From IMG/VR virus record IMGVR_UViG_3300027770_000025, positions 248,001 through 312,000 of that record: DNA of 64,000 nucleotides; one strand, given 5' to 3'. The position numbers and the translations under genes were made by a program. Shown here piece by piece: positions 14,910 through 47,626 of the stretch; positions within the stretch are counted from its first letter, which is position 1, and each line of letters begins with the position of its first letter. The notes under the pieces were generated by a model. That model worked only from the letters and a program-made list of their open reading frames with translations, was not told the DNA's origin and did not search any database.

Positions 14910-17900
14910 TTATTCCCTATTGAATGTTGAATCTGGGTTATTTGGAATAACTATAGCAGATCCAAATTGACCTTTATTAGCTTGTAATATTTCCATTTCC
15001 TGATACATTAGATCCTTACCTAATCTCATTGCTTGATAATCCCTTGCAAGGAAAGGTGGATTAGGATATCCATAATCGCTGGAGTCAACAAAATCAGGTC
15101 TAGTGTCATCCGGTCTTTTATCCTTGTGATCTATTACTTTTATGAATCCTGGCTTAGAAACCTCGTAGATGTTTCCTGCAGAATCTTCTACCTGATTGTA
15201 TATCGTATAATATCCAGCATCTACAAAAGTGTAGATAAAGTATGGACTGCCCTTTATGTTAAGAAGCTCGTCTTTTGTTTCGGAGTTACTTAGTATCCAC
15301 TTATTGTTTTTCTTACCGTAAATATTAGAAGCATAGTTATTAAAAACCACGGTGGATAATAACGGAATCTCCATATAGTTATCTGTCGAATGAACATCGC
15401 ACCAGGTCCAAGCTCCTGACCCAGGCCTAGAAATAATATTTCCCAGATTTATACCTAACTCAGGATAGTATTGTTCAGACAGGGTAGAAAATCCTCCTGT
15501 TGAACCAAATGATATAAAACTTCCGGTACCCCCAGTAGAGCCACTAGTATTAACTCCGAAAATAAATACGTTTGAAGAAGTATCCTTAGAGAATGTTAGG
15601 TCGCCTTCAAAAGTACCTAAATTTTGTAGATCTAAATTTTTATTAGCATTATTCGTCTTGAGTAGTGCGACACTATATCCTGTTAATCCTGGTGTGTTTA
15701 TTTGATATGACGTAAAAAATTGGGATTCGTTGATTTTATCAAAAGCTAAAAATCCCATATCCCTATCAAGAACGCCAGTAGAATTATATGAAATATCCCT
15801 TAATGTTCCCTGATCTGTTATTTCAGCTGTGTATAAATAGTTCTGTCCTGTAGAGCCCAATACTATTTGGCTCCCGAAATAAGTACCAGTTACACCCTGA
15901 CCATAGTCTCCCCTAATGGTATTAACATAATAACCCGAATTATCCTTAGCTGTAATTATTTTCTTAATGCCGTTATAAGAGGAAGTACCGCCTATATCTA
16001 CGATTCCCCCAGTTATCCCGTTAGCTGTGGGACCTGAAATTATATAGAATGGATAATTTTTAGAAGCTGAGGGGGATGGATGCAGAATATTAAGCCCCAT
16101 CATATTAAAAGTACCAGATGATTGTCCAGTTATAATAAAGCCATTTTCGTTATTTGATGATTTTATATCTTCTATAGAAAATCCACCAGTTGAACCTGAA
16201 GTGCTTTTTATTTCAACTAAATCTAGATTATCTGAATCAAGTTTAATGTATGCACCAAATTCATTAGAAGCAAGGTCTCCGATATAATAAGGAACCGTCG
16301 ATATATCTCCCGTTCTATCCCATTCATTTTTTAAAGAGCTGAAAATGACAGGTGTGTTTGATGTGTGGGTAATCGCAAGATTCACATGATACCTAGAAGA
16401 ATCTATTTTAGTGCTTACAGTCCCACCTGGATAAGGTAATGCTACGGTTGAAACGGGAGGGAAATATCTAAACGAATTAATTCTATATTTTTTTCTTATG
16501 TTGCTTTCATAATCACCAGTAACCCCGTTTATATCGGTAAATGTAGAGGAACTTCCTAGATCTCTTCCTATTTTAACCACGTACGCTGCATTTGAATCAG
16601 TCTTTGATCCAGCATTAGCTATAGTGTATGGATAAACTGAAGGAGTCCATTGGCAAACTTGAATAGTAATAGATGTTCCGTTTGTATATGGAAATGCTGC
16701 TGTTGCCCCGCTCTGATAAGTTGTACGTATTCCGAATGAATTTGTATCCCTATAAATCTGATCTATTCTATAGTAAGCAGTGTTACCGCCCTGTACGATT
16801 ATTAAACTTTGTCCAGTCAGTCTGTTGTTAATAGATGAAAATTCATTGCCTCCTATTCCGTTTATAAAACTAAGATAGACCAAATTTACATTATCGTAGC
16901 TACCCCCAGTTCCTGCGGGGAATCCGGTAAACCCAAAGTCACAGTAAGTGTTTGCAACCGAATCACCGCTACCTACTGAAACCCTCCATGGGCTATTTAT
17001 GACCACCGTGCCAAATGAGGGTACACCTATCCCAGGATATGTCCCTGCAGTAGCACCGGGAACATTAGGATTGGTAATACCCACCGGTGCCCCAGTTGCA
17101 CCCCCCGTTGTAATTGGAAATCCGTATGCCCCCCAGACAAATTCGCCAACCTCAATAAATCTATTAAAAGTACCGGAAGCATATAAATATAATCCATCCT
17201 CGCTTGAGCAAAGACTTTGAACTTCGGTGCTAAATCCTTTAAATGGAAGTATCGATTCGACATTACCTCTCTCTGAATAAGAAACTATAAACCCGGTTTT
17301 TCCGTTATTAACTGAATTATAAGTTGATAGTGTGCCTGAATTTAAACTAGGTCCATAGTCAGATAATATTGCTGGGGTATTGTCCGCATAATATCCAAAC
17401 TGGATCGAATAATTTCCGGTATAAATATCGGGCTGAATGTAGCCTCCAACATAATATTTCTTCTCTCCTAGAAAAGTCTGTGTTGTCGAAGAGGTTACTC
17501 TAAACATTCCTATGTTACCAGATGCTCCTGAAATATATGAAATAGATTTCTCCCATTCGGAAGCTTGTATAGATTCCGAGATCTGATCTTGCTCAAATGA
17601 AGGCAAAGCCCAATTGTTCCAATATGGTTGTTTACCTGCTCTACCATCAGCTATATCACTTAATTTTGCGGTCAGAAATAAATTACGTGGATCCAGCCCA
17701 GGGTGCTTATATTCAAGGAAAGAGCTATCATAAACCATCCACTCCGGATAAGTCCATGTGTATTTATTTACTTTAGGTAAAGGTGAACCCCCGCCAGTGG
17801 CAGTATGGTAAGTGAAATTCCATCCCGTTGCTCCTGCATATTTAGAAGATCCATAAACGTGGGGCAAATCATAAGCGAAAAGCGAAAGTTGATTATATCC

Positions 17901-18944
17901 AAGAATCCATAAATCATTCGCGTGGATAGTTAGTCCATCCTGATTCGTATTGTGTCCTATTAGCTCTATACCAAGCACAGCATTTGAATTCAATGATGAA
18001 TTTGCTGTATTGAATTGCGTGTGTGATGTTCCATTAAAATGCCAAAGACCGGTTCCATCTCCAAGTTCCCCGTCTCCCATTGAATAAAAAACATGTCCAT
18101 TATCTCTTGCTTTCACACAAGTTATTGGTCCCCCACTAACCCCATAATTCCAGAATTCAAAACCATCAAAATACGAAATACCTATGTCAGTTCCGATCCA
18201 TAGGTTTCCATTCTCGTCAAAGTCTAAACAATATACGTTATCTGATATTATTCCGCTTGTGCTAGTGTTGTAAACTTTTGCCTGCTGGATATATTTTGAT
18301 CCGTTTGTTAAAGTTATGGTTTGTAATTTTCCTTGCGGAACAACAAAAAGTCCTTCCGAAGTTCCCATATAGTAAAGATAATCCTTACCGTCATACCCTT
18401 TAGTTTCTATATCATAGATATGCGGCCAAGTATAATCATCAACGGTTTCATCCCATTGATCTGTTTCTTTAAAATAATAAAATAATCTTCCACCGGTGGC
18501 TCCATTTATTCTTGTATAATCAGATGCACCGGTTCCTCCTACCCCGTTAAGTGGATTGATAAAAGCTAAAATATCGTCACCAAAGGGGCAAGCGTATATT
18601 AATGAAACTTCCTGAGGCTGATTAAAAGTTCCCAAAGCCTGGAATGTCCAGCTATCACCCTCGTCAACTTTATTAGTATTGATCCAAAAAACTGCAACCT
18701 GATTTATGTTAGCATTTCCTGCTGTTGGTCCTTGTGCTACTCCAACCCAGGCTTTATCCTCCGGATCTATTGATATACATCTGGTATCCAGATAGTATGG
18801 TGAAACCTGGGGAACTGCGGAGTTTGTGCTGTCGTAATATTCCCAGATTGACCCGTTGAATCTTCTAACATCCTGACCTGAAGCCCAAGCGTAAAATTCT
18901 TGATCTAGATCTATCTGATTAATATAAAGGGATGAATTAGGCAT
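14910..18944 (-). CDS. Large virion protein with beta-propeller (Reg_prop-like) repeats, probable receptor-binding/appendage protein
   Basis: IISDNVYCLDFDENGNLWIGTDIGISYFDG and FNTANSSLNSNAVLGI resemble two-component-regulator propeller repeats; C-terminal YTFVDAGYYTIYNQVEDSAGN is PKD-like. Confidence 0.65.
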   Translation of the reverse strand: MPNSSLYINQIDLDQEFYAWASGQDVRRFNGSIWEYYDSTNSAVPQVSPYYLDTRCISIDPEDKAWVGVAQGPTAGNANINQVAVFWINTNKVDEGDSWTFQALGTFNQPQEVSLIYACPFGDDILAFINPLNGVGGTGASDYTRINGATGGRLFYYFKETDQWDETVDDYTWPHIYDIETKGYDGKDYLYYMGTSEGLFVVPQGKLQTITLTNGSKYIQQAKVYNTSTSGIISDNVYCLDFDENGNLWIGTDIGISYFDGFEFWNYGVSGGPITCVKARDNGHVFYSMGDGELGDGTGLWHFNGTSHTQFNTANSSLNSNAVLGIELIGHNTNQDGLTIHANDLWILGYNQLSLFAYDLPHVYGSSKYAGATGWNFTYHTATGGGSPLPKVNKYTWTYPEWMVYDSSFLEYKHPGLDPRNLFLTAKLSDIADGRAGKQPYWNNWALPSFEQDQISESIQASEWEKSISYISGASGNIGMFRVTSSTTQTFLGEKKYYVGGYIQPDIYTGNYSIQFGYYADNTPAILSDYGPSLNSGTLSTYNSVNNGKTGFIVSYSERGNVESILPFKGFSTEVQSLCSSEDGLYLYASGTFNRFIEVGEFVWGAYGFPITTGGATGAPVGITNPNVPGATAGTYPGIGVPSFGTVVINSPWRVSVGSGDSVANTYCDFGFTGFPAGTGGSYDNVNLVYLSFINGIGGNEFSSINNRLTGQSLIIVQGGNTAYYRIDQIYRDTNSFGIRTTYQSGATAAFPYTNGTSITIQVCQWTPSVYPYTIANAGSKTDSNAAYVVKIGRDLGSSSTFTDINGVTGDYESNIRKKYRINSFRYFPPVSTVALPYPGGTVSTKIDSSRYHVNLAITHTSNTPVIFSSLKNEWDRTGDISTVPYYIGDLASNEFGAYIKLDSDNLDLVEIKSTSGSTGGFSIEDIKSSNNENGFIITGQSSGTFNMMGLNILHPSPSASKNYPFYIISGPTANGITGGIVDIGGTSSYNGIKKIITAKDNSGYYVNTIRGDYGQGVTGTYFGSQIVLGSTGQNYLYTAEITDQGTLRDISYNSTGVLDRDMGFLAFDKINESQFFTSYQINTPGLTGYSVALLKTNNANKNLDLQNLGTFEGDLTFSKDTSSNVFIFGVNTSGSTGGTGSFISFGSTGGFSTLSEQYYPELGINLGNIISRPGSGAWTWCDVHSTDNYMEIPLLSTVVFNNYASNIYGKKNNKWILSNSETKDELLNIKGSPYFIYTFVDAGYYTIYNQVEDSAGNIYEVSKPGFIKVIDHKDKRPDDTRPDFVDSSDYGYPNPPFLARDYQAMRLGKDLMYQEMEILQANKGQFGSAIVIPNNPDSTFNRE

Positions 18945-19001
18945 CTATCTTTTTTTAAATTGTATTGTATATATTTGAATTTTAATAACAGGGATATTAA
19001 A

Positions 19002-20732
19002 TTATGGACTGCCGAAATACCATCCTCTTACAGGACCAGTAGATCCGGGGTTGGCTATCTGATATGGGTTGGCTATTCTATTTGTATTGAAAGAAATCCA
19101 ATTTGTTTTACCTATGGTTGCTGTTGTAGGAACTCCTCGCCTCCCAGCCCAAGGACCGTTGTCGCTTAGATCTACTGCAGCTAGAAAAAGGCCCGAACCC
19201 CCCCAGTCGTTATCTATAATTGAAATTTTAAGGCCATTAAAAGTATTTGGATCTACTAATCCTATATTATACATCCATGCATAATCGGGAGAAGCCGAAG
19301 CAACAATGTTATTTTCAAACCCGTTTCCATTACTAACTAAAGCAGCATTTATTAGACTTGCAACACCTAATCCTGCTCCTGTATCCTGCATAAATACCAA
19401 TGTACCATCGGGGGAATTTCCCACACCCCCTGAAATTAATATATCAGATATTGTAACATCAACAGTCATATCATAGCCAGATTCGATATTATTTATACAA
19501 GGTGAAACCGTGCTAAATCTCAGGGTTAAATATAGTGTAACAGTACCTGATACATACGATGCAGAGGGAAGACAAGCCCCACCGTATCCCCCACTAGCAC
19601 CTCCTGCGCCATCAAGTTCATATTCATAAGCTACAGGATATTCACCGCTATAAAAGGCTACCTCTAATGCTTTAGAAGACTGGTACCCTATGGAAAATTC
19701 ATTAAAAATTAGATTCGATACCTGTGTACTTGTCCAATACCTGTTACTAACTAAAGATTTTCCATAGCCTTGTATATCAGCAAAATAAAATATATTACTG
19801 AAATAAGTACCAAGATCACCAGGAAGCATATAATTACCCAGTGTGTACCTTGTTAATGATCCCCATCCGGTTGCCCCAGGTACACCAAGAGCATTAAAAG
19901 CAAGACTGGAAGCAATATATTGTCCAGTAAACAAACCATAATTTAAACTGCTGGGCATTGTTATATCTTGCGAAGAAGACCAATATGATGTAATTTCTCC
20001 CTGAGCTCTGAATTGAGTGTTATTTATAGGAATAGGTACCGCAGAACTACCAGTGGTATTTACAGAATATGCATTACCAGAACCTGATATACCTAATGCT
20101 GTTAATAGAATTCCCGTGTCTGCCACGGATTGATAATGCAGGCCTAATGTAAAGGGAGATGCTAAATAATTATAACGCTCAAATAAGCCATTTTTGCTAT
20201 ATGTCACAGTCACGGAAGAAGATGCAGTGTTACCCAAAAGGCTAGTTAAAATAACAGAGGATGTTGATACGTAAGTTGAATATGTAGCACCAGACTCAGA
20301 TCCGGTTAAATCCAACCAGCTGTAAATTAGAGCACCCGTTTGGTTGTTTATCGTGGTAAGATTTGGGTTATTTAAACCAGCAAGGTTCCATGTATAGTAG
20401 GCAGCACTAGCTGTAGATCCTACTGCAGTATATGATACTGTGGTTCCCATAGGGACAACAGTGGTCTGGTTGCTGATCATTGTCATTGAGATATTCTCAG
20501 GGACTACAACAATTATGTTTGACTTCTCGTTGGAAGAACTGATGCTTCCGATGCTTACTGTCAATTTAGCACTAAATCCAGTATTTGATGGAGAAACATA
20601 TCTAACAATAGGATTAGTTGCTGTTGCCCCAGTAGGTGTTCCGCCGGGAAAATTCCAGATCCTTCCAGTAGGTGATCCCTCTGAGATGTCCTGATATAAA
20701 ATGTAATCCCCTTGGCTTATTGATATTGACAT
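19002..20732 (-). CDS. PKD-domain virion protein
   Basis: N-terminal YQDISEGSPTGRIWNFPGGTPTGATATNPIVRY is a PKD/Ig-like signature. Confidence 0.65.
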   Translation of the reverse strand: MSISISQGDYILYQDISEGSPTGRIWNFPGGTPTGATATNPIVRYVSPSNTGFSAKLTVSIGSISSSNEKSNIIVVVPENISMTMISNQTTVVPMGTTVSYTAVGSTASAAYYTWNLAGLNNPNLTTINNQTGALIYSWLDLTGSESGATYSTYVSTSSVILTSLLGNTASSSVTVTYSKNGLFERYNYLASPFTLGLHYQSVADTGILLTALGISGSGNAYSVNTTGSSAVPIPINNTQFRAQGEITSYWSSSQDITMPSSLNYGLFTGQYIASSLAFNALGVPGATGWGSLTRYTLGNYMLPGDLGTYFSNIFYFADIQGYGKSLVSNRYWTSTQVSNLIFNEFSIGYQSSKALEVAFYSGEYPVAYEYELDGAGGASGGYGGACLPSASYVSGTVTLYLTLRFSTVSPCINNIESGYDMTVDVTISDILISGGVGNSPDGTLVFMQDTGAGLGVASLINAALVSNGNGFENNIVASASPDYAWMYNIGLVDPNTFNGLKISIIDNDWGGSGLFLAAVDLSDNGPWAGRRGVPTTATIGKTNWISFNTNRIANPYQIANPGSTGPVRGWYFGSP

Positions 20733-40663: not shown

Positions 40664-41251
40664 TTAGATATCTACGCTAAATCCTTTTGATTTACCAAAA
40701 GTTGAATCGTCTCTATTATAAAGATCCATGCCAACTACAAACTTAAAAAGTTTTAAAAATATTGCAGGGACAAATACGTCTTTTGCTTTAACCACGTCGT
40801 TAGCAGGAATGAAAATGAACTCTGATAATCTTTCCGATTCTGTCCCATCTGTCGTAGGAGTACCCCTTTCTATTCCAGTGACATCAACACCAAAGCAAGG
40901 ATGCTCCGCATCCACCATTTTAGAGGCCGTTACCGTGCCTAAAAAGTGCCACTTAGTGTTATCATCAATATCAAATCCTGACTCTTCTTTTAGCTCTCTT
41001 TTAGCTGTTTCTAGGAAGTCCGGATCTTCGTCTTCTGCGGTACCTGATATTAGGCTAATCGAATATCCACCTTCCCTAAAAGGATTTTTTTCTTTAAGAA
41101 CTCCTAGCATTAAGGGTAGTCCTTGATCGTCAGTAATAAAAGGTAAAATCACTACAGATTCTACTGTTGATCTTATTCCTATTTTACCGTCTATCTCAAC
41201 AACATCGAATCTTGGGGTTGTTAAAAGTATTTTTTCCTCAGGGTTATTCAT
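40664..41251 (-). CDS. NUDIX hydrolase
   Basis: Nudix box GTAEDEDPDFLETAKRELKEESGF. Confidence 0.85.
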   Translation of the reverse strand: MNNPEEKILLTTPRFDVVEIDGKIGIRSTVESVVILPFITDDQGLPLMLGVLKEKNPFREGGYSISLISGTAEDEDPDFLETAKRELKEESGFDIDDNTKWHFLGTVTASKMVDAEHPCFGVDVTGIERGTPTTDGTESERLSEFIFIPANDVVKAKDVFVPAIFLKLFKFVVGMDLYNRDDSTFGKSKGFSVDI

Positions 41252-41912
41252 TGTCAGTTTCTTTATTATTTGTTACTAATGTTCTTTTATCTGATGCTCC
41301 AGGAGAAGGAGATTTAGATTTTTCCACCTTTTCGTAATAAGACTTTTTAATAGAATCAGCCAGAGAAGCTTTAATATCCTCTATATCTACTCCATCTAAA
41401 ACAAAGTCTATAATTTCTCTTTCCGCATCTTCAAAAGAACCTGATAAAACTGTATAAAGATCCTTAGGAGGAAGATTCAATTTTATTTTAATTGAAACAT
41501 CAACCATGTTCTTTTTCTGTTTCTTCAGTAGCTTATATATCGGAGAATCGTTTTGTGAGATTTTAGAATCTTCGTATATGATGGATGTAACCGTTGTCTG
41601 CTCATTCGGTCTCGTATGAATCTGCTGATTATTAACGGGAATGACCTGTGCAAGTTGTGCGGGTAGCATAATCACATACTCATTAAGAAGCTCTGAATTT
41701 ATTCTTTTCCCGCTCTGAAATTCTATAAATGAAATATCTCCATTTAATACGATGTCCTTGTATTTTTCATCGATTCCAATGTCATCCCCTTTGATCCACT
41801 GGTAATCAAATGAGCTATAATGTGAGCGAGCATCATTTATTGTTTGTTCACTTATTTCCATTTTTTTCTTTTTTTTATTCCCCTTATTAAATAATGAAGA
41901 TAATATCCCCAT
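41244..41912 (-). CDS. Hypothetical protein
   Basis: ORF overlapping the NUDIX start by 8 nt. Confidence 0.65.
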   Translation of the reverse strand: MGILSSLFNKGNKKKKKMEISEQTINDARSHYSSFDYQWIKGDDIGIDEKYKDIVLNGDISFIEFQSGKRINSELLNEYVIMLPAQLAQVIPVNNQQIHTRPNEQTTVTSIIYEDSKISQNDSPIYKLLKKQKKNMVDVSIKIKLNLPPKDLYTVLSGSFEDAEREIIDFVLDGVDIEDIKASLADSIKKSYYEKVEKSKSPSPGASDKRTLVTNNKETDNE

Positions 41913-43682: not shown

Positions 43683-44411
43683 ATGTCAAAGAGCATAAGT
43701 CCTATATGGTTCCTTAGAGAGCCTATAGATCCGGAGCACAAAGAGTATGTGCTATTAGATTACTTAAAAGAAACGAGTAAGGGGTTAAACAAGGAAAATT
43801 GTTACCCTATAATGAAAGAAATATCACGGATTGTAAAAATACTAAACGAATTTAGAAAGGATAAGATAATTAGTGAATCAGTCAAGAAGTCTCTAGGAAA
43901 AGAGGACAGAGAATATATCAATTCTTTTGTCCTTATTAATCTTCTACCAGAGCAAAGGGAAACACTAAATATTATAATAGAAGACTCACTGGATACATTA
44001 TATGATTATTCGGAGATATGTCTGGACATTTTAAAAGAAGAAGAATCTAAAATAAAAATATTTAGAATTCAATCAAAATTTGATGACGCGGATAATCTAG
44101 TAAATTCAGGGATAGTTATTATCAGAAATATGGTAACAGATAAACTACTTAATTATTTCTTTAAATCAAACGTTAGAATGGAAACGCCAGATGGAGAAAA
44201 GGAGGTTTCAATTTTAAAAAAAATACACCTAAAAAATTCATTCTTCTCATTGAACTATGAGTATATCTACCATGAGATACTAAATGAAATAAACACAGAT
44301 AATAAATACTCGCCTAAATTCTATGTTGTTGAAATATACGAGAACTTTGAAGAAACATCAGAGATCTATAAGTTAGCTAAAGAGAAATTCATAGAACATA
44401 TAGGGATATAA
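43683..44411 (+). CDS. Hypothetical protein (WFLREPIDPEHKEYVLLDYL)
   Basis: 242-aa plus-strand ORF with its own promoter motif and terminator. Confidence 0.75.
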   Translation: MSKSISPIWFLREPIDPEHKEYVLLDYLKETSKGLNKENCYPIMKEISRIVKILNEFRKDKIISESVKKSLGKEDREYINSFVLINLLPEQRETLNIIIEDSLDTLYDYSEICLDILKEEESKIKIFRIQSKFDDADNLVNSGIVIIRNMVTDKLLNYFFKSNVRMETPDGEKEVSILKKIHLKNSFFSLNYEYIYHEILNEINTDNKYSPKFYVVEIYENFEETSEIYKLAKEKFIEHIGI

Positions 44412-45545: not shown

Positions 45546-46952
45546 CTATATGTTGTCCAGAAAAAGATCCACAGCTTTTTGTCTGTATTTAAGCTTATCC
45601 TCCTTGATCTCTGGATTTTTTAATGCCTCTTTCTTCCTATTGACAACAGAGTCGGGAAGCATTGGTCCGAATGTGTCTTTTAGAATCTTTTTATCAGTTC
45701 TCCATTCGAGCGGAAGATGTAAAGCAAATCTAACTATATCAAGGTTTAAGAAGGGGCTTCTTAGCTCTAGAGTATGAGCCATAGACATCTTATCCAATCT
45801 AGGTAAATGATAATAAGACAGTTCATCAAATACATCAGATTGCTGGGAGTCATATTCATGTATTCTTGAATATCCTCCAAATAGCTCATCAGATCCATCA
45901 CCACTTAAAACTATTCTATAACCAGATTCTTTCTTAACTGCCTCAAATAAATGATACTGCGGGATCACTGATCCTAAATCCACCGGTGTTTCATTCCATA
46001 GCGTGTATATAAGAGCATTCTTACTTGAATCCATACTATAGTCTAGAAAATTGACAGAAGTGCTTAAATGTGCGCTTAAATCGTTTACAAACGGTGTTTC
46101 CCCATTCTCTATAGTAAACCACGTAACCTTGGCATTCATTTCTTTTAGTACCCCTGCTATAATCGAAGAATCAAGACCCCCTGATACCAAAAGTGATATT
46201 GGGTAGTTCTTAGAGACAAGTCTATTTTTTACGCTCTCAAACATCTTATCCCACAGCCAACTCATGTGTGTCTCGTAATCTGCACCTTCTAGTTCGGATA
46301 TTGGTGATTCCCATGTTCTGTAATAAGGACCATATGTTTGTTCAAATAGAGGAGACGCTATATTATAAAAATAAAACGTATTAGGTAGAATCCTTTTAAT
46401 CGATTTAATCGGTGTTCTGTTGTCCTTATTGTAACCCCATTTTCTGATAGCACTTATATAGGTTTCGTCTAGCTCATCCAATACAGTGGTAAGACCCTTG
46501 ATCTCCGAACAAATCTCACCAAGATCATTCTTATAAAGGCATTTCTTTCCCAATGGATCAGTAAATGCGATTACACTTCCTTTATTAGAATCGTATATTA
46601 CTACCGCCCAAAATCCATCCCATGTTTGTATATGGGGTAAATATGCAGCAGCAAAGAATTCTAGATTTCCCCCTTTATATCCGCTGAATAAACTGCATAA
46701 ATATTCCGTATCAGAAGAAAATGTATTCCTGTCATAATTAAATATTTCCCCATTGAACATCAAATACACCCCGGGAGAAACTTCTCTTGGCTGATTCCAT
46801 TCGTCACCATCGGATGTTTGTATAGGCAATCTATGATGACATAATGTAATCTTATCAAGTTCCTCTACAGATCTTTCAATTCCCCTATGTTTTATCGTAT
46901 CTAAAATTTCAGGATGTTTATCCGCTCTAGTTGTTAATAATATTCCGCACAT
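45546..46952 (-). CDS. asnB: Asparagine synthetase B-like glutamine amidotransferase
   Basis: MCGI N-terminal nucleophile, HRG, FNGEIFNY, SDTE, SGGLDSS, SGDGSDELFGGY and RSPFL motifs. Confidence 0.92.
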   Translation of the reverse strand: MCGILLTTRADKHPEILDTIKHRGIERSVEELDKITLCHHRLPIQTSDGDEWNQPREVSPGVYLMFNGEIFNYDRNTFSSDTEYLCSLFSGYKGGNLEFFAAAYLPHIQTWDGFWAVVIYDSNKGSVIAFTDPLGKKCLYKNDLGEICSEIKGLTTVLDELDETYISAIRKWGYNKDNRTPIKSIKRILPNTFYFYNIASPLFEQTYGPYYRTWESPISELEGADYETHMSWLWDKMFESVKNRLVSKNYPISLLVSGGLDSSIIAGVLKEMNAKVTWFTIENGETPFVNDLSAHLSTSVNFLDYSMDSSKNALIYTLWNETPVDLGSVIPQYHLFEAVKKESGYRIVLSGDGSDELFGGYSRIHEYDSQQSDVFDELSYYHLPRLDKMSMAHTLELRSPFLNLDIVRFALHLPLEWRTDKKILKDTFGPMLPDSVVNRKKEALKNPEIKEDKLKYRQKAVDLFLDNI

Positions 46953-46958
46953 GTTTTT

Positions 46959-47519
46959 TTAATTAAAAAGTATATCCTCAAACATTGAACTAATATTGCT
47001 CACTGATTGATCGTCAAATTTATTTGTAATTGTCCATATTTTATGAAGTCCAGCTTCCTGAAACATAGATATTACTTTCTCATAAGTGTCTCTTTCTCTT
47101 GTATCTCCATCAATGTGATCCCACTGATCTTTGCTTCTATCGGACTTATCCGGATTTTCACCATTTATATAGATTATAGTTATCTCGTCAAGAAGTGAGT
47201 ATTTCTTAACTATCCCTATTTGATCCCTAGCTTCGTCTTCTGTTATTCTACCCTCAAGCAATCCCCACACTAAGACAGTTAATATTCCTCTATCATGTAT
47301 GAATGATTCCCCGGGGATGTCCTTTGCTAACTGCATAAGCATAAACTCTTTACCTAATGAAAATGCATGTGCTTCTTTGCTATCCTCACTTTTTAGATTT
47401 AAGTCGGCAAAGAAATTGGCAAACTTAAACTGAAATCTTGGGATGCTAAAAGATTCTGAGATATATTCAGATAAAAATGTCTTGCCTGAATTTCTTGGGC
47501 CTTCGAATACGTATACCAT
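46959..47519 (-). CDS. P-loop nucleotide (dNMP/thymidylate kinase-like) kinase
   Basis: VFEGPRNSGKT Walker A and FIHDRG motif. Start moved to ATG 47519. Confidence 0.75.
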   Translation of the reverse strand: MVYVFEGPRNSGKTFLSEYISESFSIPRFQFKFANFFADLNLKSEDSKEAHAFSLGKEFMLMQLAKDIPGESFIHDRGILTVLVWGLLEGRITEDEARDQIGIVKKYSLLDEITIIYINGENPDKSDRSKDQWDHIDGDTRERDTYEKVISMFQEAGLHKIWTITNKFDDQSVSNISSMFEDILFN

Positions 47520-47561
47520 ATATTTCTTTTTATGGTGGAACATCGCACATGTTCCACCTAG

Positions 47562-47569
47562 CAAATATA
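47562..47569 (-). promoter_or_regulatory. Bacteroidota-type sigma70 -7 element TATATTTG
   Basis: Matches TAnnTTTG; lies after a terminator and upstream of kinase-asnB. No canonical -33 TTTG seen. Confidence 0.5.
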
Positions 47570-47593: not shown

Positions 47594-47626
47594 AAAAACC
47601 CCGATCTTTATTAAAATCGGGGTTTT
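47594..47626 (-). terminator. Intrinsic terminator
   Basis: aaaaccccgat...atcggggtttt hairpin right after the 825-aa gene. Confidence 0.8.

What the first reader, a model, noticed from the sequence alone, without database searches (positions are those of the whole stretch)
45546..47569. Kinase plus AsnB-like amidotransferase operon: possible nucleotide or DNA modification module
A dNMP-kinase-like gene and an intact glutamine-dependent amidotransferase are 6 nt apart. They are insulated by a terminator and preceded by a host-type promoter element, unlike the late genes around them. Established: AsnB-family enzymes amidate diverse carboxylates, and phages with modified bases encode dedicated dNMP kinases. 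Inference: amidation of a carboxylated nucleotide (or sugar) followed by phosphorylation, rather than asparagine supply. The nearby NUDIX could sanitise pools.
Basis: partly seen in the sequence, partly recalled or inferred. Interest (0 to 1): 0.6.

Follow-up and report, generated by a model that had tools for sequence, protein, structure and literature searches.

The report
Phage kinase–amidotransferase nucleotide-modification module
A freshwater jumbo phage carries a tightly coupled thymidylate-kinase-like gene and an unusual asparagine-synthetase-like gene that, across many phage lineages, always travel with a cytosine-type thymidylate-synthase relative, which points to synthesis of an undescribed modified DNA base rather than to asparagine supply.

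Summary
The two genes are real. A 186-194 aa P-loop kinase (46959-47543, minus strand) lies 6 nt upstream of a 468 aa AsnB-like glutamine amidotransferase (45546-46952). A strong hairpin terminator precedes the pair. No host-type promoter was found.

The window lies in a 348.6-kb T4-like freshwater jumbo phage, and the pair sits 5-8 kb from the major capsid gene in 52 of 53 related contigs.

The amidotransferase keeps the glutaminase and PP-loop sites. It scores below the asparagine-synthase cut-off and replaces two key synthetase residues (E. coli AsnB E348 to Asp, D384 to His). This signature is invariant in about 215 mostly viral clusters.

In 135 of 138 phage loci the gene is next to this kinase, or within 3.5 kb of a short ThyA homologue with Asp at the cytosine-determining position. 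Both flank it in five loci, and the other three are cut. dNTP pyrophosphatases, dUTPase and dCMP deaminase are often nearby. The window's genome has the same ThyA homologue 95 kb away, plus a normal ThyA.

Best reading: a T4-like base-replacement pathway with an added ATP- and glutamine-dependent step. The chemistry is unknown.

The parts
46959..47543 (-). P-loop kinase with a thymidylate-kinase-like fold. It is 194 aa from ATG 47543; the conserved Met at 47519 gives 186 aa; the mechanical ORF starts at TTG 47564. Motifs: FEGPRNSGKT (Walker A), HDRG, NPxKxxRxKDQWD.
45546..46952 (-). AsnB-superfamily glutamine amidotransferase, 468 aa. It has an Ntn glutaminase domain (Cys2) and a PP-loop synthetase domain (SGGLDSS). 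The subfamily signature is SGDGSDE...YDSQxSD...YHLPRLDK.
   Evidence: (TIGR01536 scores 208 bits, below the cut-off of 267).
46953..46958 (-). 6-nt spacer (AAAAAC) between the kinase stop codon and the amidotransferase ATG. It contains no Shine-Dalgarno sequence, so the two genes are probably co-transcribed and translationally coupled (inferred).
   Evidence: In relatives the spacing ranges from -22 to +13 nt.
47595..47626 (-). Intrinsic-terminator-like hairpin (14-bp stem, 4-nt loop, U-run) directly after the stop of the upstream 825-aa gene.
   Evidence: -18.4 kcal/mol, z = -4.75, 0 of 200 shuffles fold as well. Hairpins with T-runs and different stem sequences sit at the same place in 7 of 16 relatives inspected.
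40664..41251 (-). NUDIX hydrolase, 195 aa. It is a candidate dNTP pyrophosphatase of the pathway; its membership of the module is tentative.
   Evidence: (PF00293, 31.4 bits). Homologues lie 3-4 kb downstream of the AsnB-like gene in L073, L080 and L088. The genome has no MazG-like or trimeric dUTPase homologue by small HMMs.
41244..41912 (-). 222-aa protein of unknown function, always next to the NUDIX gene. Its membership of the module is tentative.
   Evidence: It co-occurs with the NUDIX gene near the AsnB-like gene in L073, L080 and L088. It has no Pfam, PHROG or Atlas lead.

Best explanation
The pair belongs to a phage pathway that makes a non-canonical pyrimidine deoxynucleotide, most likely derived from cytosine, on the pattern of T4's dCTPase / dCMP hydroxymethylase / dNMP kinase route.

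Proposed roles:
- A short ThyA homologue with Asp at the position of E. coli ThyA N177 modifies C5 of dCMP. In this genome it lies at G000 197404-198189, outside the window.
- The AsnB-like enzyme adds one ATP-dependent (adenylating) and glutamine-dependent (ammonia-delivering) step on that nucleotide or on its C5 substituent.
- The adjacent thymidylate-kinase-like enzyme phosphorylates the resulting dNMP, so that it can reach the triphosphate pool and the phage DNA.
- The NUDIX enzyme may remove the canonical dNTP.

Shown: gene identities at family or fold level, intact catalytic motifs, the altered residue pair in the synthetase site, and the gene linkage across lineages.

Inferred: the substrate, the order of steps, that the kinase acts on a dNMP, and that the phage DNA is modified at all.
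For: 1. Linkage.
- In 80 loci found with the AsnB-like profile, the kinase sits directly upstream in 55.
- In 24 of the other 25, a ThyA-like gene sits directly upstream.
- Over 138 loci (104 unique proteins), 135 have the kinase or the ThyA-like gene within the locus and 5 have both. The 3 exceptions are cut on the upstream side.
- L062, L064 and L065 read kinase - AsnB-like - ThyA-like. In L064 a dUTPase and a family B DNA polymerase follow.

2. Members at 35% identity keep the context.
- L099: AsnB-like - methyltransferase fusion - ThyA-like - PRA-PH pyrophosphatase.
- L100: TMPK-like - dUTPase_2 - ThyA-like - dCMP deaminase - AsnB-like - PolB.
- L067: dCMP deaminase, MazG-like pyrophosphatase, C5-methyltransferase-like, ThyA-like, AsnB-like, dUTPase, ThyX.

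3. All 35 ThyA-like proteins keep the catalytic Cys and R-S-x-D and have Asp where ThyA has N177. They are 206-283 aa long.
- This genome also has a normal ThyA (304 bits on TIGR03284).
- The ThyA-like gene is present in 5 of 5 other jumbo relatives.

4. The AsnB-like subfamily has E348 to Asp and D384 to His (E. coli numbering), invariant or nearly so in 40 diverse representatives. Remote phage AsnB-likes keep Glu. It scores below NCBIfam's asparagine-synthase cut-offs.

5. The kinase fold is closest to thymidylate kinases, and the genome has no other PF02223 match.

6. Precedents.
- CmoY, an asparagine-synthetase homologue, amidates 5-carboxymethylcytosine in phage DNA with glycine, and a glutaminase-bearing sister cluster is uncharacterised (PMC12783734).
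- Achromobacter phage Motura has an AsnB-like gene between QueC and a TGT.
- T4 gene 1 (dNMP kinase) also lies among structural genes.

7. The pair is a fixed element of the clade, present in 52 of 53 MCP-anchored loci. Pieces of both genes occur in metatranscriptome assemblies of three studies, which is weak evidence of expression.
Against: - No step of the chemistry is shown.
- No enzyme that would create a carboxyl group on a nucleotide was found, yet every characterised AsnB-family member acts on a carboxylate.
- Most residues that bind aspartate or the adenylate in real asparagine synthetases are kept (D351, E352, R387, K449 in E. coli numbering), so aspartate itself remains a possible substrate.
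- From memory, an E348D variant of E. coli AsnB is still active.
- In this genome the ThyA-like gene is 95 kb away, and the pair sits in the head-gene region, not in a nucleotide-metabolism cluster.
- The kinase shows no sequence homology beyond the P-loop to T4 gp1 or to a 5-hmdU DNA kinase, and its Walker A lacks the acidic residue typical of thymidylate kinases (from memory).
- The Asp-for-Asn rule for cytosine specificity was established in canonical ThyA and T4 gp42, not in this divergent ThyA clade. Cultured-phage members of that clade are annotated as thymidylate synthase.
- The AF2 model of the substrate region (residues 346-401) is unreliable.
Confidence: 0.55

Rival explanations
1. 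Two independent auxiliary genes. The first is a compact but genuine glutamine-dependent asparagine synthetase that supplies Asn for an AT-rich, Asn-rich phage proteome. The second is a divergent thymidylate or dNMP kinase for ordinary dNTP supply. They are adjacent by history, not by function.
For: - The closest solved and curated relatives are asparagine synthetases: human ASNS 7.6e-30 by profile, E. coli AsnB 3.3e-26, and TIGR01536 as best family at 208 bits.
- The glutaminase site, the PP-loop, D351, E352, R387 and K449 are kept.
- Giant viruses carry similar asparagine synthases, and Nucleocytoviricota clusters appear among the Atlas neighbours.
- Genome GC is about 35%.
- The genome lacks any other thymidylate kinase.
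Against: - It scores below both NCBIfam asparagine-synthase cut-offs (208 < 267; 147 < 499).
- E348 to Asp and D384 to His are invariant across the subfamily. Replacing the equivalent human Glu-364 with Ala or Gln inactivates ASNS (PMC6748925).
- The gene is near-obligatorily linked to a cytosine-type ThyA homologue or to this kinase in 135 of 138 loci, across lineages with different DNA polymerases, including 36-kb phages where a 450-aa amino-acid gene would be costly.
- The kinase-to-AsnB spacing of -22 to +13 nt is kept down to 48% identity.
Confidence: 0.2
2. Post-replicative DNA hypermodification. The kinase phosphorylates a 5-hydroxymethyl pyrimidine in DNA, like the 5-hmdU DNA kinases. 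The AsnB-like enzyme then modifies the base within the polymer, like CmoY, for example by delivering ammonia or amidating an appended acid.
For: - P-loop kinases and glutamine amidotransferases are listed together as thymidine-hypermodification machinery, and amidotransferases remain uncharacterised there (PMC8989533, PMC13229309).
- CmoY acts on DNA (PMC12783734).
- M6 gp54 (187 aa) is the same size as this kinase.
- A hydroxymethylase-like ThyA homologue is present.
- C5-methyltransferase-like genes flank the AsnB-like gene in L067 and L099.
Against: - The kinase profile matches M6 gp54 only over the 17-residue P-loop (hhalign probability 25%).
- tblastn of the kinase against 50,697 phage records finds nothing at E <= 0.01.
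- Thymidylate kinases are the best structural matches, and a DR motif typical of NMP kinases is present.
- Kinase-less clades would lack the activating step.
- The window's genome has no C5-methyltransferase.
- An amino-acid:DNA transferase was not looked for, because I had no accession for it.
Confidence: 0.12
3. A function tied to the virion. Because the pair is fixed inside the head-gene region, the amidotransferase could amidate or cross-link a capsid or internal protein, or a cell-wall precursor, with the kinase as an unrelated neighbour.
For: - The pair lies 5-8 kb downstream of the major capsid gene in 52 of 53 related loci.
- The neighbouring genes are of unknown function.
- AsnB relatives include lasso-peptide cyclases and peptidoglycan amidotransferases (weak NCBIfam hits; otherwise from general knowledge).
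Against: - In all other lineages the same subfamily sits in replication and nucleotide-metabolism clusters, not in structural ones.
- The Cys nucleophile of the glutaminase domain is conserved, unlike in the cyclases.
- T4's own dNMP kinase gene also sits among structural genes, so position alone says little.
Confidence: 0.05

Closest known systems
T4 hydroxymethylcytosine pathway (gp56 dCTPase, gp42 dCMP hydroxymethylase, gp1 dNMP kinase)
   Same: - A ThyA homologue of about 250 aa with Asp at the base-specificity position.
- A dedicated small P-loop kinase.
- dNTP pyrophosphatases nearby in relatives.
- Co-existence with a normal thymidylate synthase and a dCMP deaminase.
- The kinase gene lies among structural genes in both phages.
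   Different: - There is an additional AsnB-like amidotransferase with no counterpart in T4.
- The kinase is not a sequence relative of gp1.
- The pyrophosphatase in this genome would be a NUDIX, not a gp56 type.
- No glucosyltransferase link was examined.
CmoA-CmoX-CmoY system of Synechococcus phage S-B43 and its glutaminase-bearing 'second cluster' (Yang et al. 2025, PMC12783734); Streptomyces phage TurkishDelight gp121-125 looks like the latter
   Same: A phage asparagine-synthetase homologue is used to turn a carboxyl group on a modified cytosine into an amide. The second cluster also has the glutamine-hydrolysing domain.
   Different: - The window's genome has no CmoA and no C5-methyltransferase.
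- The partner here is a folate-type ThyA homologue and a kinase, which suggests action on nucleotides rather than on DNA.
- TurkishDelight gp124 keeps Glu in GEGSDE and matches the window protein only over residues 233-446, at 26% identity.
Asparagine synthetase B (E. coli AsnB, human ASNS)
   Same: The two-domain architecture, Cys1 glutaminase, PP-loop, and D351, E352, R387 and K449.
   Different: - It is about 85-90 residues shorter.
- It scores below the curated cut-offs.
- E348 is Asp and D384 is His.
- It has subfamily-specific conserved blocks (KWGY...RTP, GGYxR, YDSQxSD).
- It is viral in distribution and linked to nucleotide-metabolism genes.
Thymidylate kinase (PF02223)
   Different: - There is no Pfam match even at E <= 1.
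- The Walker A reads GPRNSGKT, without the acidic residue.
- The motif is DRG rather than DRY/H/F.
- The lid region is distinct (NPxKxxRxKDQWD).
AsnB-like gene in the 7-deazaguanine cluster of Achromobacter phage Motura
   Same: A phage AsnB-like amidotransferase embedded in a DNA base-modification cluster (FolE, QueE, QueC, TGT).
   Different: It is only 23% identical to the window protein, keeps Glu in GEGADE, and works in a different pathway. The window's genome has no QueC or TGT.

Membership tests
Asparagine synthetase B (glutamine-hydrolysing, EC 6.3.5.4) | N-terminal Cys nucleophile and the Ntn glutaminase residues (R49, N74-G75-E76, D98 in E. coli) | tested here: met
   MCGI start; R41, N67, G68, E69 and D81 are invariant in 32 relatives.
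Asparagine synthetase B (glutamine-hydrolysing, EC 6.3.5.4) | PP-loop SGGxDS and the adenylate-binding Lys (K449) | tested here: met
   SGGLDSS at 257-263; K441 aligns with K449.
Asparagine synthetase B (glutamine-hydrolysing, EC 6.3.5.4) | Score at or above the curated equivalog cut-off | tested here: not met
   TIGR01536 scores 208.3 against 267.1; PRK09431 scores 147.1 against 499.
Asparagine synthetase B (glutamine-hydrolysing, EC 6.3.5.4) | Catalytic Glu (E348 in E. coli, E364 in human) and Asp (D384 / D400) of the aspartate amino-group pocket | tested here: not met
   These positions are Asp352 and His382, invariant or nearly so in 40 diverse representatives. The human E364A and E364Q variants are inactive (PMC6748925).
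Asparagine synthetase B (glutamine-hydrolysing, EC 6.3.5.4) | Converts Asp to Asn | not testable with these tools
   This needs an enzyme assay or asnA asnB complementation.
CmoY-type DNA 5-carboxymethylcytosine amide ligase system | Co-occurrence with CmoA (Cx-SAM synthase) and CmoX (C5-methyltransferase homologue with an SPPC motif) | tested here: not met
   PF00145 and TIGR00740 give no match in the 348.6-kb genome. The methyltransferase-like neighbour in L067 has TEC, not SPPC.
Thymidylate kinase (PF02223) | Match to the family profile | tested here: not met
   There is no Pfam hit and no PF02223 match in the genome at E <= 1. The only hit is PHROG 761, 1e-6 over residues 11-112.
Thymidylate kinase (PF02223) | Fold, P-loop and DR(Y/H/F) motif | tested here: inconclusive
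T4 gp1 dNMP kinase | Sequence homology to gp1 | tested here: not met
   hhalign aligns the P-loop region only, at 2% probability.
5-hydroxymethyluracil DNA kinase (5-HMUDK) | Sequence homology to M6 gp54 and its relatives | tested here: not met
   hhalign aligns 17 P-loop residues at 25% probability. tblastn against all phage records finds no match.
5-hydroxymethyluracil DNA kinase (5-HMUDK) | Co-occurring amino-acid:DNA transferase (aGPT-Pplase) | not tested
   I had no reliable family accession to search with.
T4-type base-replacement pathway | ThyA homologue with Asp at the N177 position (cytosine type) alongside a normal thymidylate synthase | tested here: met
   Asp in 35 of 35, with the Cys nucleophile kept. 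The normal ThyA lies at G000 180422-181633.
T4-type base-replacement pathway | Enzyme that removes the canonical dNTP | tested here: inconclusive
   MazG-like, dUTPase_2 or PRA-PH genes lie in the relatives' clusters. In this genome only a NUDIX of unknown specificity was found.
T4-type base-replacement pathway | Modified base in virion DNA | not testable with these tools
   This needs nucleoside LC-MS, or nanopore or PacBio signal analysis.

The most novel reading that the evidence does not exclude
These phages make a so-far undescribed C5-substituted deoxycytidine that carries an amide or amine, and they make it at the mononucleotide level. One concrete version follows:
- The gp42-like enzyme's exocyclic-methylene intermediate is captured by an amino acid such as aspartate instead of water.
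- The Asp/His-type AsnB-like enzyme recognises the appended aspartyl part and converts its side-chain carboxylate to the amide. This would explain why the aspartate-binding residues are kept while the two residues next to the alpha-amino group are changed.
- The thymidylate-kinase-like enzyme then passes the bulky dNMP on towards the polymerase.

This would be a new route to hypermodified DNA that works before replication rather than after it.
Probability: 0.1. Interest if true: 0.85.

Novelty: new variant of a known kind. Interest (0 to 1): 0.68.

Why it matters
Modified bases are a main way for phages to escape restriction and CRISPR. They are also a source of enzymes for DNA chemistry.

An asparagine-synthetase homologue was first shown to modify phage DNA only in 2025 (CmoY). 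The subfamily found here differs from CmoY in three ways: an Asp/His pair replaces Glu/Asp in the synthetase site, the glutaminase domain is intact, and the partners are a cytosine-type ThyA homologue and a thymidylate-kinase-like enzyme.

It is large, with about 215 clusters at 50% identity, almost all viral. It is a fixed core gene of an abundant clade of freshwater jumbo phages seen in at least ten lake studies.

If the inference is right, it marks an unknown modified cytosine that is widespread in nature. It also gives a simple sequence signature (GDGxDE ... YHxPRxD next to ThyA with Asp) for finding the phages that make it.

Tried and rejected
- **DNA search against cultured phages.** Nothing matched the region.
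- **Kinase by sequence.** It had no hit against solved structures and no tblastn hit against all phage records.
- **7-deazaguanine route.** I rejected it for this genome because there is no TGT and no QueC; the only QueC hit is the PP-loop of the AsnB-like gene itself.
- **CmoA/CmoX route.** I rejected it for this genome.
- **5-HMUDK and T4 gp1 homology of the kinase.** Both were rejected at sequence level.
- **Structure model of the AsnB-like protein.** It was unusable in the substrate region (pLDDT 32-37 over residues 350-400), so I did no pocket analysis and no fold search on it.
- **Single-protein locus searches with distant representatives.** These found nothing; an alignment query was needed.
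- **Atlas search for the 222-aa protein.** It gave no lead.
- **Absence variants.** I looked among capsid-related contigs for relatives that lack the pair, to run a co-loss test with the ThyA-like gene. None lacked it: 52 of 53 have it, and the exception is a cut locus.
- **Literature.** Searches for this gene combination found only the CmoY paper.
- **Complex prediction.** I did not run it, because I do not claim that the proteins bind each other.
- **Metatranscriptome contigs.** They lie on both genes, but none bridges the junction and DNA carry-over cannot be excluded. Co-transcription is therefore not shown.
Full report
**What is there**

The window is bases 248001-312000 of a 348,582-bp IMG/VR virus record from a freshwater metagenome, judged complete by CheckV. 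It is a T4-like jumbo phage with about 35% GC.
- A Gp23-type major capsid gene and a prohead-protease gene lie 5-9 kb upstream of the finding, on the same strand.
- At the given coordinates there are two minus-strand genes.

The first gene is a P-loop protein.
- The mechanical ORF starts at TTG 47564.
- The gene caller starts it at ATG 47543 (194 aa).
- All 31 relatives aligned share the Met at 47519 (MVYVFEG...), which gives 186 aa.

The second gene (45546-46952, 468 aa) starts 6 nt after the first one's stop codon. No Shine-Dalgarno sequence lies in between.

A 14-bp hairpin followed by a U-run lies directly after the upstream 825-aa gene (-18.4 kcal/mol, z = -4.75).
- Hairpins with different stem sequences occupy the same place in 7 of 16 relatives inspected.
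- No sigma-70-like promoter is called upstream of the pair, and promoter-like sites in the region are at chance level.
- No terminator follows the second gene.
- In many relatives a TATAAT- or TATAAA-like box lies 5-15 nt before the conserved kinase start. I cannot say what kind of promoter, if any, this is.

**The kinase**

- It reaches no Pfam or NCBIfam family; AAA_14 scores 20.8 bits, below cut-off.
- Its only named hit is PHROG 761 'thymidylate kinase' (1e-6, residues 11-112).
- A profile of 31 relatives finds nothing among solved structures by sequence.
- Its AlphaFold model is good (pLDDT 86, pTM 0.83).
- Invariant motifs are FEGxRNSGK(T/S), IHDRG followed by VLxWG (reminiscent of the DRY...AYQ block of thymidylate kinases; that comparison is from memory), and NPxxxxxxKDxWD in a low-confidence lid.
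- It is not a detectable sequence relative of T4 gp1 or of the 5-hmdU DNA kinase M6 gp54.
- It has no tblastn match in 50,697 phage records.
- The genome has no PF02223 match at all.

**The amidotransferase**

- Pfam finds Asn_synthase (1e-40) and GATase_6/7.
- The best NCBIfam model is asparagine synthase TIGR01536, but at 208 bits against a cut-off of 267. AsnB PRK09431 scores 147 against 499.
- The Cys nucleophile and the glutamine-binding residues are invariant, as are SGGLDSS and the Lys that aligns with E. coli K449.
- In the alignment with E. coli AsnB, D351, E352 and R387 are kept. E348 is Asp and D384 is His.
- The same is seen against human ASNS (E364 to Asp, D400 to His). There, E364A and E364Q are inactive, and E364, D367, E368 and D400 form the pocket for the substrate's amino group (PMC6748925).
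- The Asp and His are invariant in 32 close relatives. In 40 representatives down to 28% mutual identity the His is invariant and the Asp nearly so.
- Remote phage AsnB-likes (Motura, TurkishDelight) keep Glu.
- From memory, the same two positions carry the Tyr/Glu dyad that defines beta-lactam and carbapenam synthetases. A change there is therefore the classic sign of a changed reaction in this superfamily. I could not print that alignment here.
- The exhaustive search finds 215 clusters (50% identity) at E <= 1e-30. The 150 listed are mostly about 420-490 aa long (a minority are shorter fragments) and 35-57% identical (one short partial match at 78%). This set stands apart from about 13,000 general AsnB relatives.
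- Atlas neighbours are viral.

**Context: the decisive evidence**

- With the family profile I fetched 80 viral loci. In 55 the kinase gene ends within a few bases of the AsnB-like start. The other 25 have no kinase.
- In 24 of those 25, a 250-260 aa ThyA-like gene lies directly upstream. The exception has only 1.2 kb of upstream sequence.
- These ThyA-like proteins are homologous to an ORF of the window's own genome at 197404-198189 (27-37% identity, E down to 6e-53).
- Three kinase-bearing loci read kinase - AsnB-like - ThyA-like. In L064 a dUTPase and a family B DNA polymerase follow.
- A second fetch centred on a distant representative brought the total to 138 loci with 104 distinct proteins. 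Of these, 84 have the kinase, 56 have the ThyA-like gene, 5 have both and 3 have neither. All 3 are cut less than 2.1 kb upstream.
- On a maximum-likelihood tree, the kinase-linked genes form one clade (support 97). The three-gene arrangement is basal within it, and all other lineages are ThyA-linked. The root is at the midpoint only.
- Members at 35% identity keep the theme.
  - L099: PolA ... AsnB-like, a methyltransferase fusion, ThyA-like, PRA-PH pyrophosphatase.
  - L100: DnaB, a faint thymidylate-kinase hit, dUTPase_2, ThyA-like, dCMP deaminase, AsnB-like, PolB.
- In the 36-45 kb phages the order is a small conserved protein, a MazG-like NTP pyrophosphohydrolase (PHROGs 12184/173), ThyA-like, AsnB-like, a 133-aa protein, then dUTPase. 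L067 adds dCMP deaminase, a C5-methyltransferase-like protein and ThyX.

**The ThyA-like protein**

- All 35 examined keep the catalytic Cys and the R-S-x-D block. All have Asp where the genome's own normal ThyA has the Asn of PFNIASY (E. coli N177). They end early, at 206-283 aa.
- By established knowledge on thymidylate synthase and T4 gp42, Asn to Asp at this site switches the enzyme from dUMP to dCMP, and gp42 (246 aa) has Asp there. Applying that rule to this divergent clade is inference.
- The window's genome has both this protein and a normal ThyA (403 aa, 304 bits on TIGR03284), plus a dCMP deaminase homologue.
- Five of five other jumbo relatives have the ThyA-like gene.
- Relatives of the ThyA-like protein in 124 cultured-phage records are annotated thymidylate synthase, and none has this AsnB-like gene. 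The ThyA-like enzyme can therefore work without it, but not the reverse.

**How it most likely works**

The set ThyA(Asp) + dNTP pyrophosphatase + small kinase + normal TS + dCMP deaminase mirrors T4's route to hydroxymethyl-dCTP. The AsnB-like enzyme is the extra part. Its intact domains say that it hydrolyses glutamine, uses ATP to adenylate an oxygen, and transfers ammonia.
- What it adenylates is unknown.
- A carboxyl group on a C5 substituent would fit the family's chemistry and the CmoY precedent, but I found no enzyme that would supply one.
- Retention of most aspartate-binding residues, with changes only next to the amino-group pocket, would also fit a substrate that still contains an aspartate-like part.
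- Amination of a ring carbonyl, as PP-loop enzymes such as GMP synthetase do, cannot be excluded.
- The strict coupling of the kinase to the AsnB-like gene, rather than to the ThyA-like gene, suggests that the kinase takes the AsnB-like product.
- The NUDIX gene and its 222-aa neighbour, 4.3 kb downstream, recur 3-4 kb downstream of the AsnB-like gene in a kinase-less lineage (L073, L080, L088). They may supply the pyrophosphatase step, because the genome has no MazG-like or dUTPase homologue by my small HMMs.

I put 0.55 on a nucleotide-level modification role and 0.12 on a DNA-level variant. Plain asparagine synthesis with an unrelated kinase gets 0.2, and a virion-linked role gets 0.05.

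**Position and expression**

- The pair lies 5-8 kb downstream of the capsid gene in 52 of 53 capsid-anchored loci with enough sequence. The exception is a cut locus whose contig does hold the pair.
- It is therefore a fixed core element of the clade. T4's own gene 1 lies between 57A and gene 3, so a structural neighbourhood is no argument against a nucleotide role.
- The stretch occurs in lake and freshwater metagenomes of at least ten studies.
- Short contigs from three metatranscriptome libraries lie on both genes at 90-99% likeness. None bridges the junction, and DNA carry-over is possible.

**Comparison with what is known**

- The nearest known systems are the T4 hmC pathway (same logic, no amidotransferase) and CmoA-CmoX-CmoY (same superfamily used on a modified cytosine, different partners, acts on DNA; PMC12783734).
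- TurkishDelight's ParB - methyltransferase - GATase - methyltransferase cluster looks like that paper's uncharacterised glutaminase-bearing cluster. It is only distantly related to the window protein.
- Phage Motura places another AsnB-like gene between QueC and a TGT.
- Lee et al. (PMC8989533) and a 2026 PNAS paper (PMC13229309) note amidotransferases and P-loop kinases around thymidine-hypermodification genes, without characterising them.
- In the searchable library I found no description of the ThyA-linked Asp/His subfamily.

**Verdict**

I rate it a new variant of a known kind, with interest 0.68.

Noticed in passing
G000 197404-198189 (= L012:7404-8189, minus strand; outside the window, about 50 kb before its start): A divergent 261-aa ThyA homologue with Asp at the N177 position. 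It is the recurrent partner of the AsnB-like gene in other phages. A calcineurin-like phosphoesterase lies next to it, and a RimK-type ATP-grasp ligase lies 4.4 kb away (202577-204034).
   Followed up: yes
G000 180422-181633 (L011:10422-11633, minus strand): A canonical thymidylate synthase of 403 aa. It has large insertions and a C-terminal extension compared with the 266-position Pfam model.
   Followed up: partly
G000 174042-175730 and 186972-189323 (L011:4042-5730 and 16972-19323): A NodU/CmcH-type carbamoyltransferase (562 aa) and a 783-aa protein with a glycosyltransferase family 9 domain. Either could act on a hydroxymethyl base; neither was examined further.
   Followed up: no
window 40664-41912 (minus strand); L073 6100-7416, L080 9461-10777, L088 8897-10213: The NUDIX gene and its 222-aa upstream neighbour form a pair. 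The pair recurs 3-4 kb downstream of the AsnB-like gene in a kinase-less phage lineage.
   Followed up: partly
L015-L064, about 5-15 nt upstream of the conserved kinase start codon: Many relatives carry a TATAAT- or TATAAA-like box very close to the kinase start codon. This suggests a very short leader or a phage-specific promoter. In the window itself the box is degenerate (CATAAAAAG).
   Followed up: partly
window 43683-44411 (plus strand): A single plus-strand gene (242 aa, no family) sits in an otherwise uniformly minus-strand block of more than 40 genes. The inversion is conserved in the 391-kb relative L005.
   Followed up: no
L241 (Streptomyces phage TurkishDelight, 88490-93518): The cluster reads ParB-like, ParB-like, methyltransferase, AsnB-like GATase, methyltransferase. 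This matches the CmoA/CmoX/ligase-with-glutaminase arrangement that Yang et al. 2025 could not characterise. It is a cultured phage in which that prediction could be tested.
   Followed up: partly
L006 (Achromobacter phage Motura, 17431-20735): An AsnB-like gene lies between QueC and a tRNA-guanine-transglycosylase homologue, inside a FolE/QueE 7-deazaguanine cluster. This suggests a glutamine-dependent step in a deazaguanine DNA modification.
   Followed up: no
L067 3262-4491: A C5-cytosine-methyltransferase homologue whose catalytic motif reads HTECGNFS instead of the usual PPC or the SPPC of CmoX. It sits two genes upstream of the AsnB-like gene.
   Followed up: partly
P0148: One 198-aa relative of the kinase (91% identity over 76% of the query) carries a precomputed Maf (PF02545) hit. 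It may be a chimera or a frameshift product.
   Followed up: no
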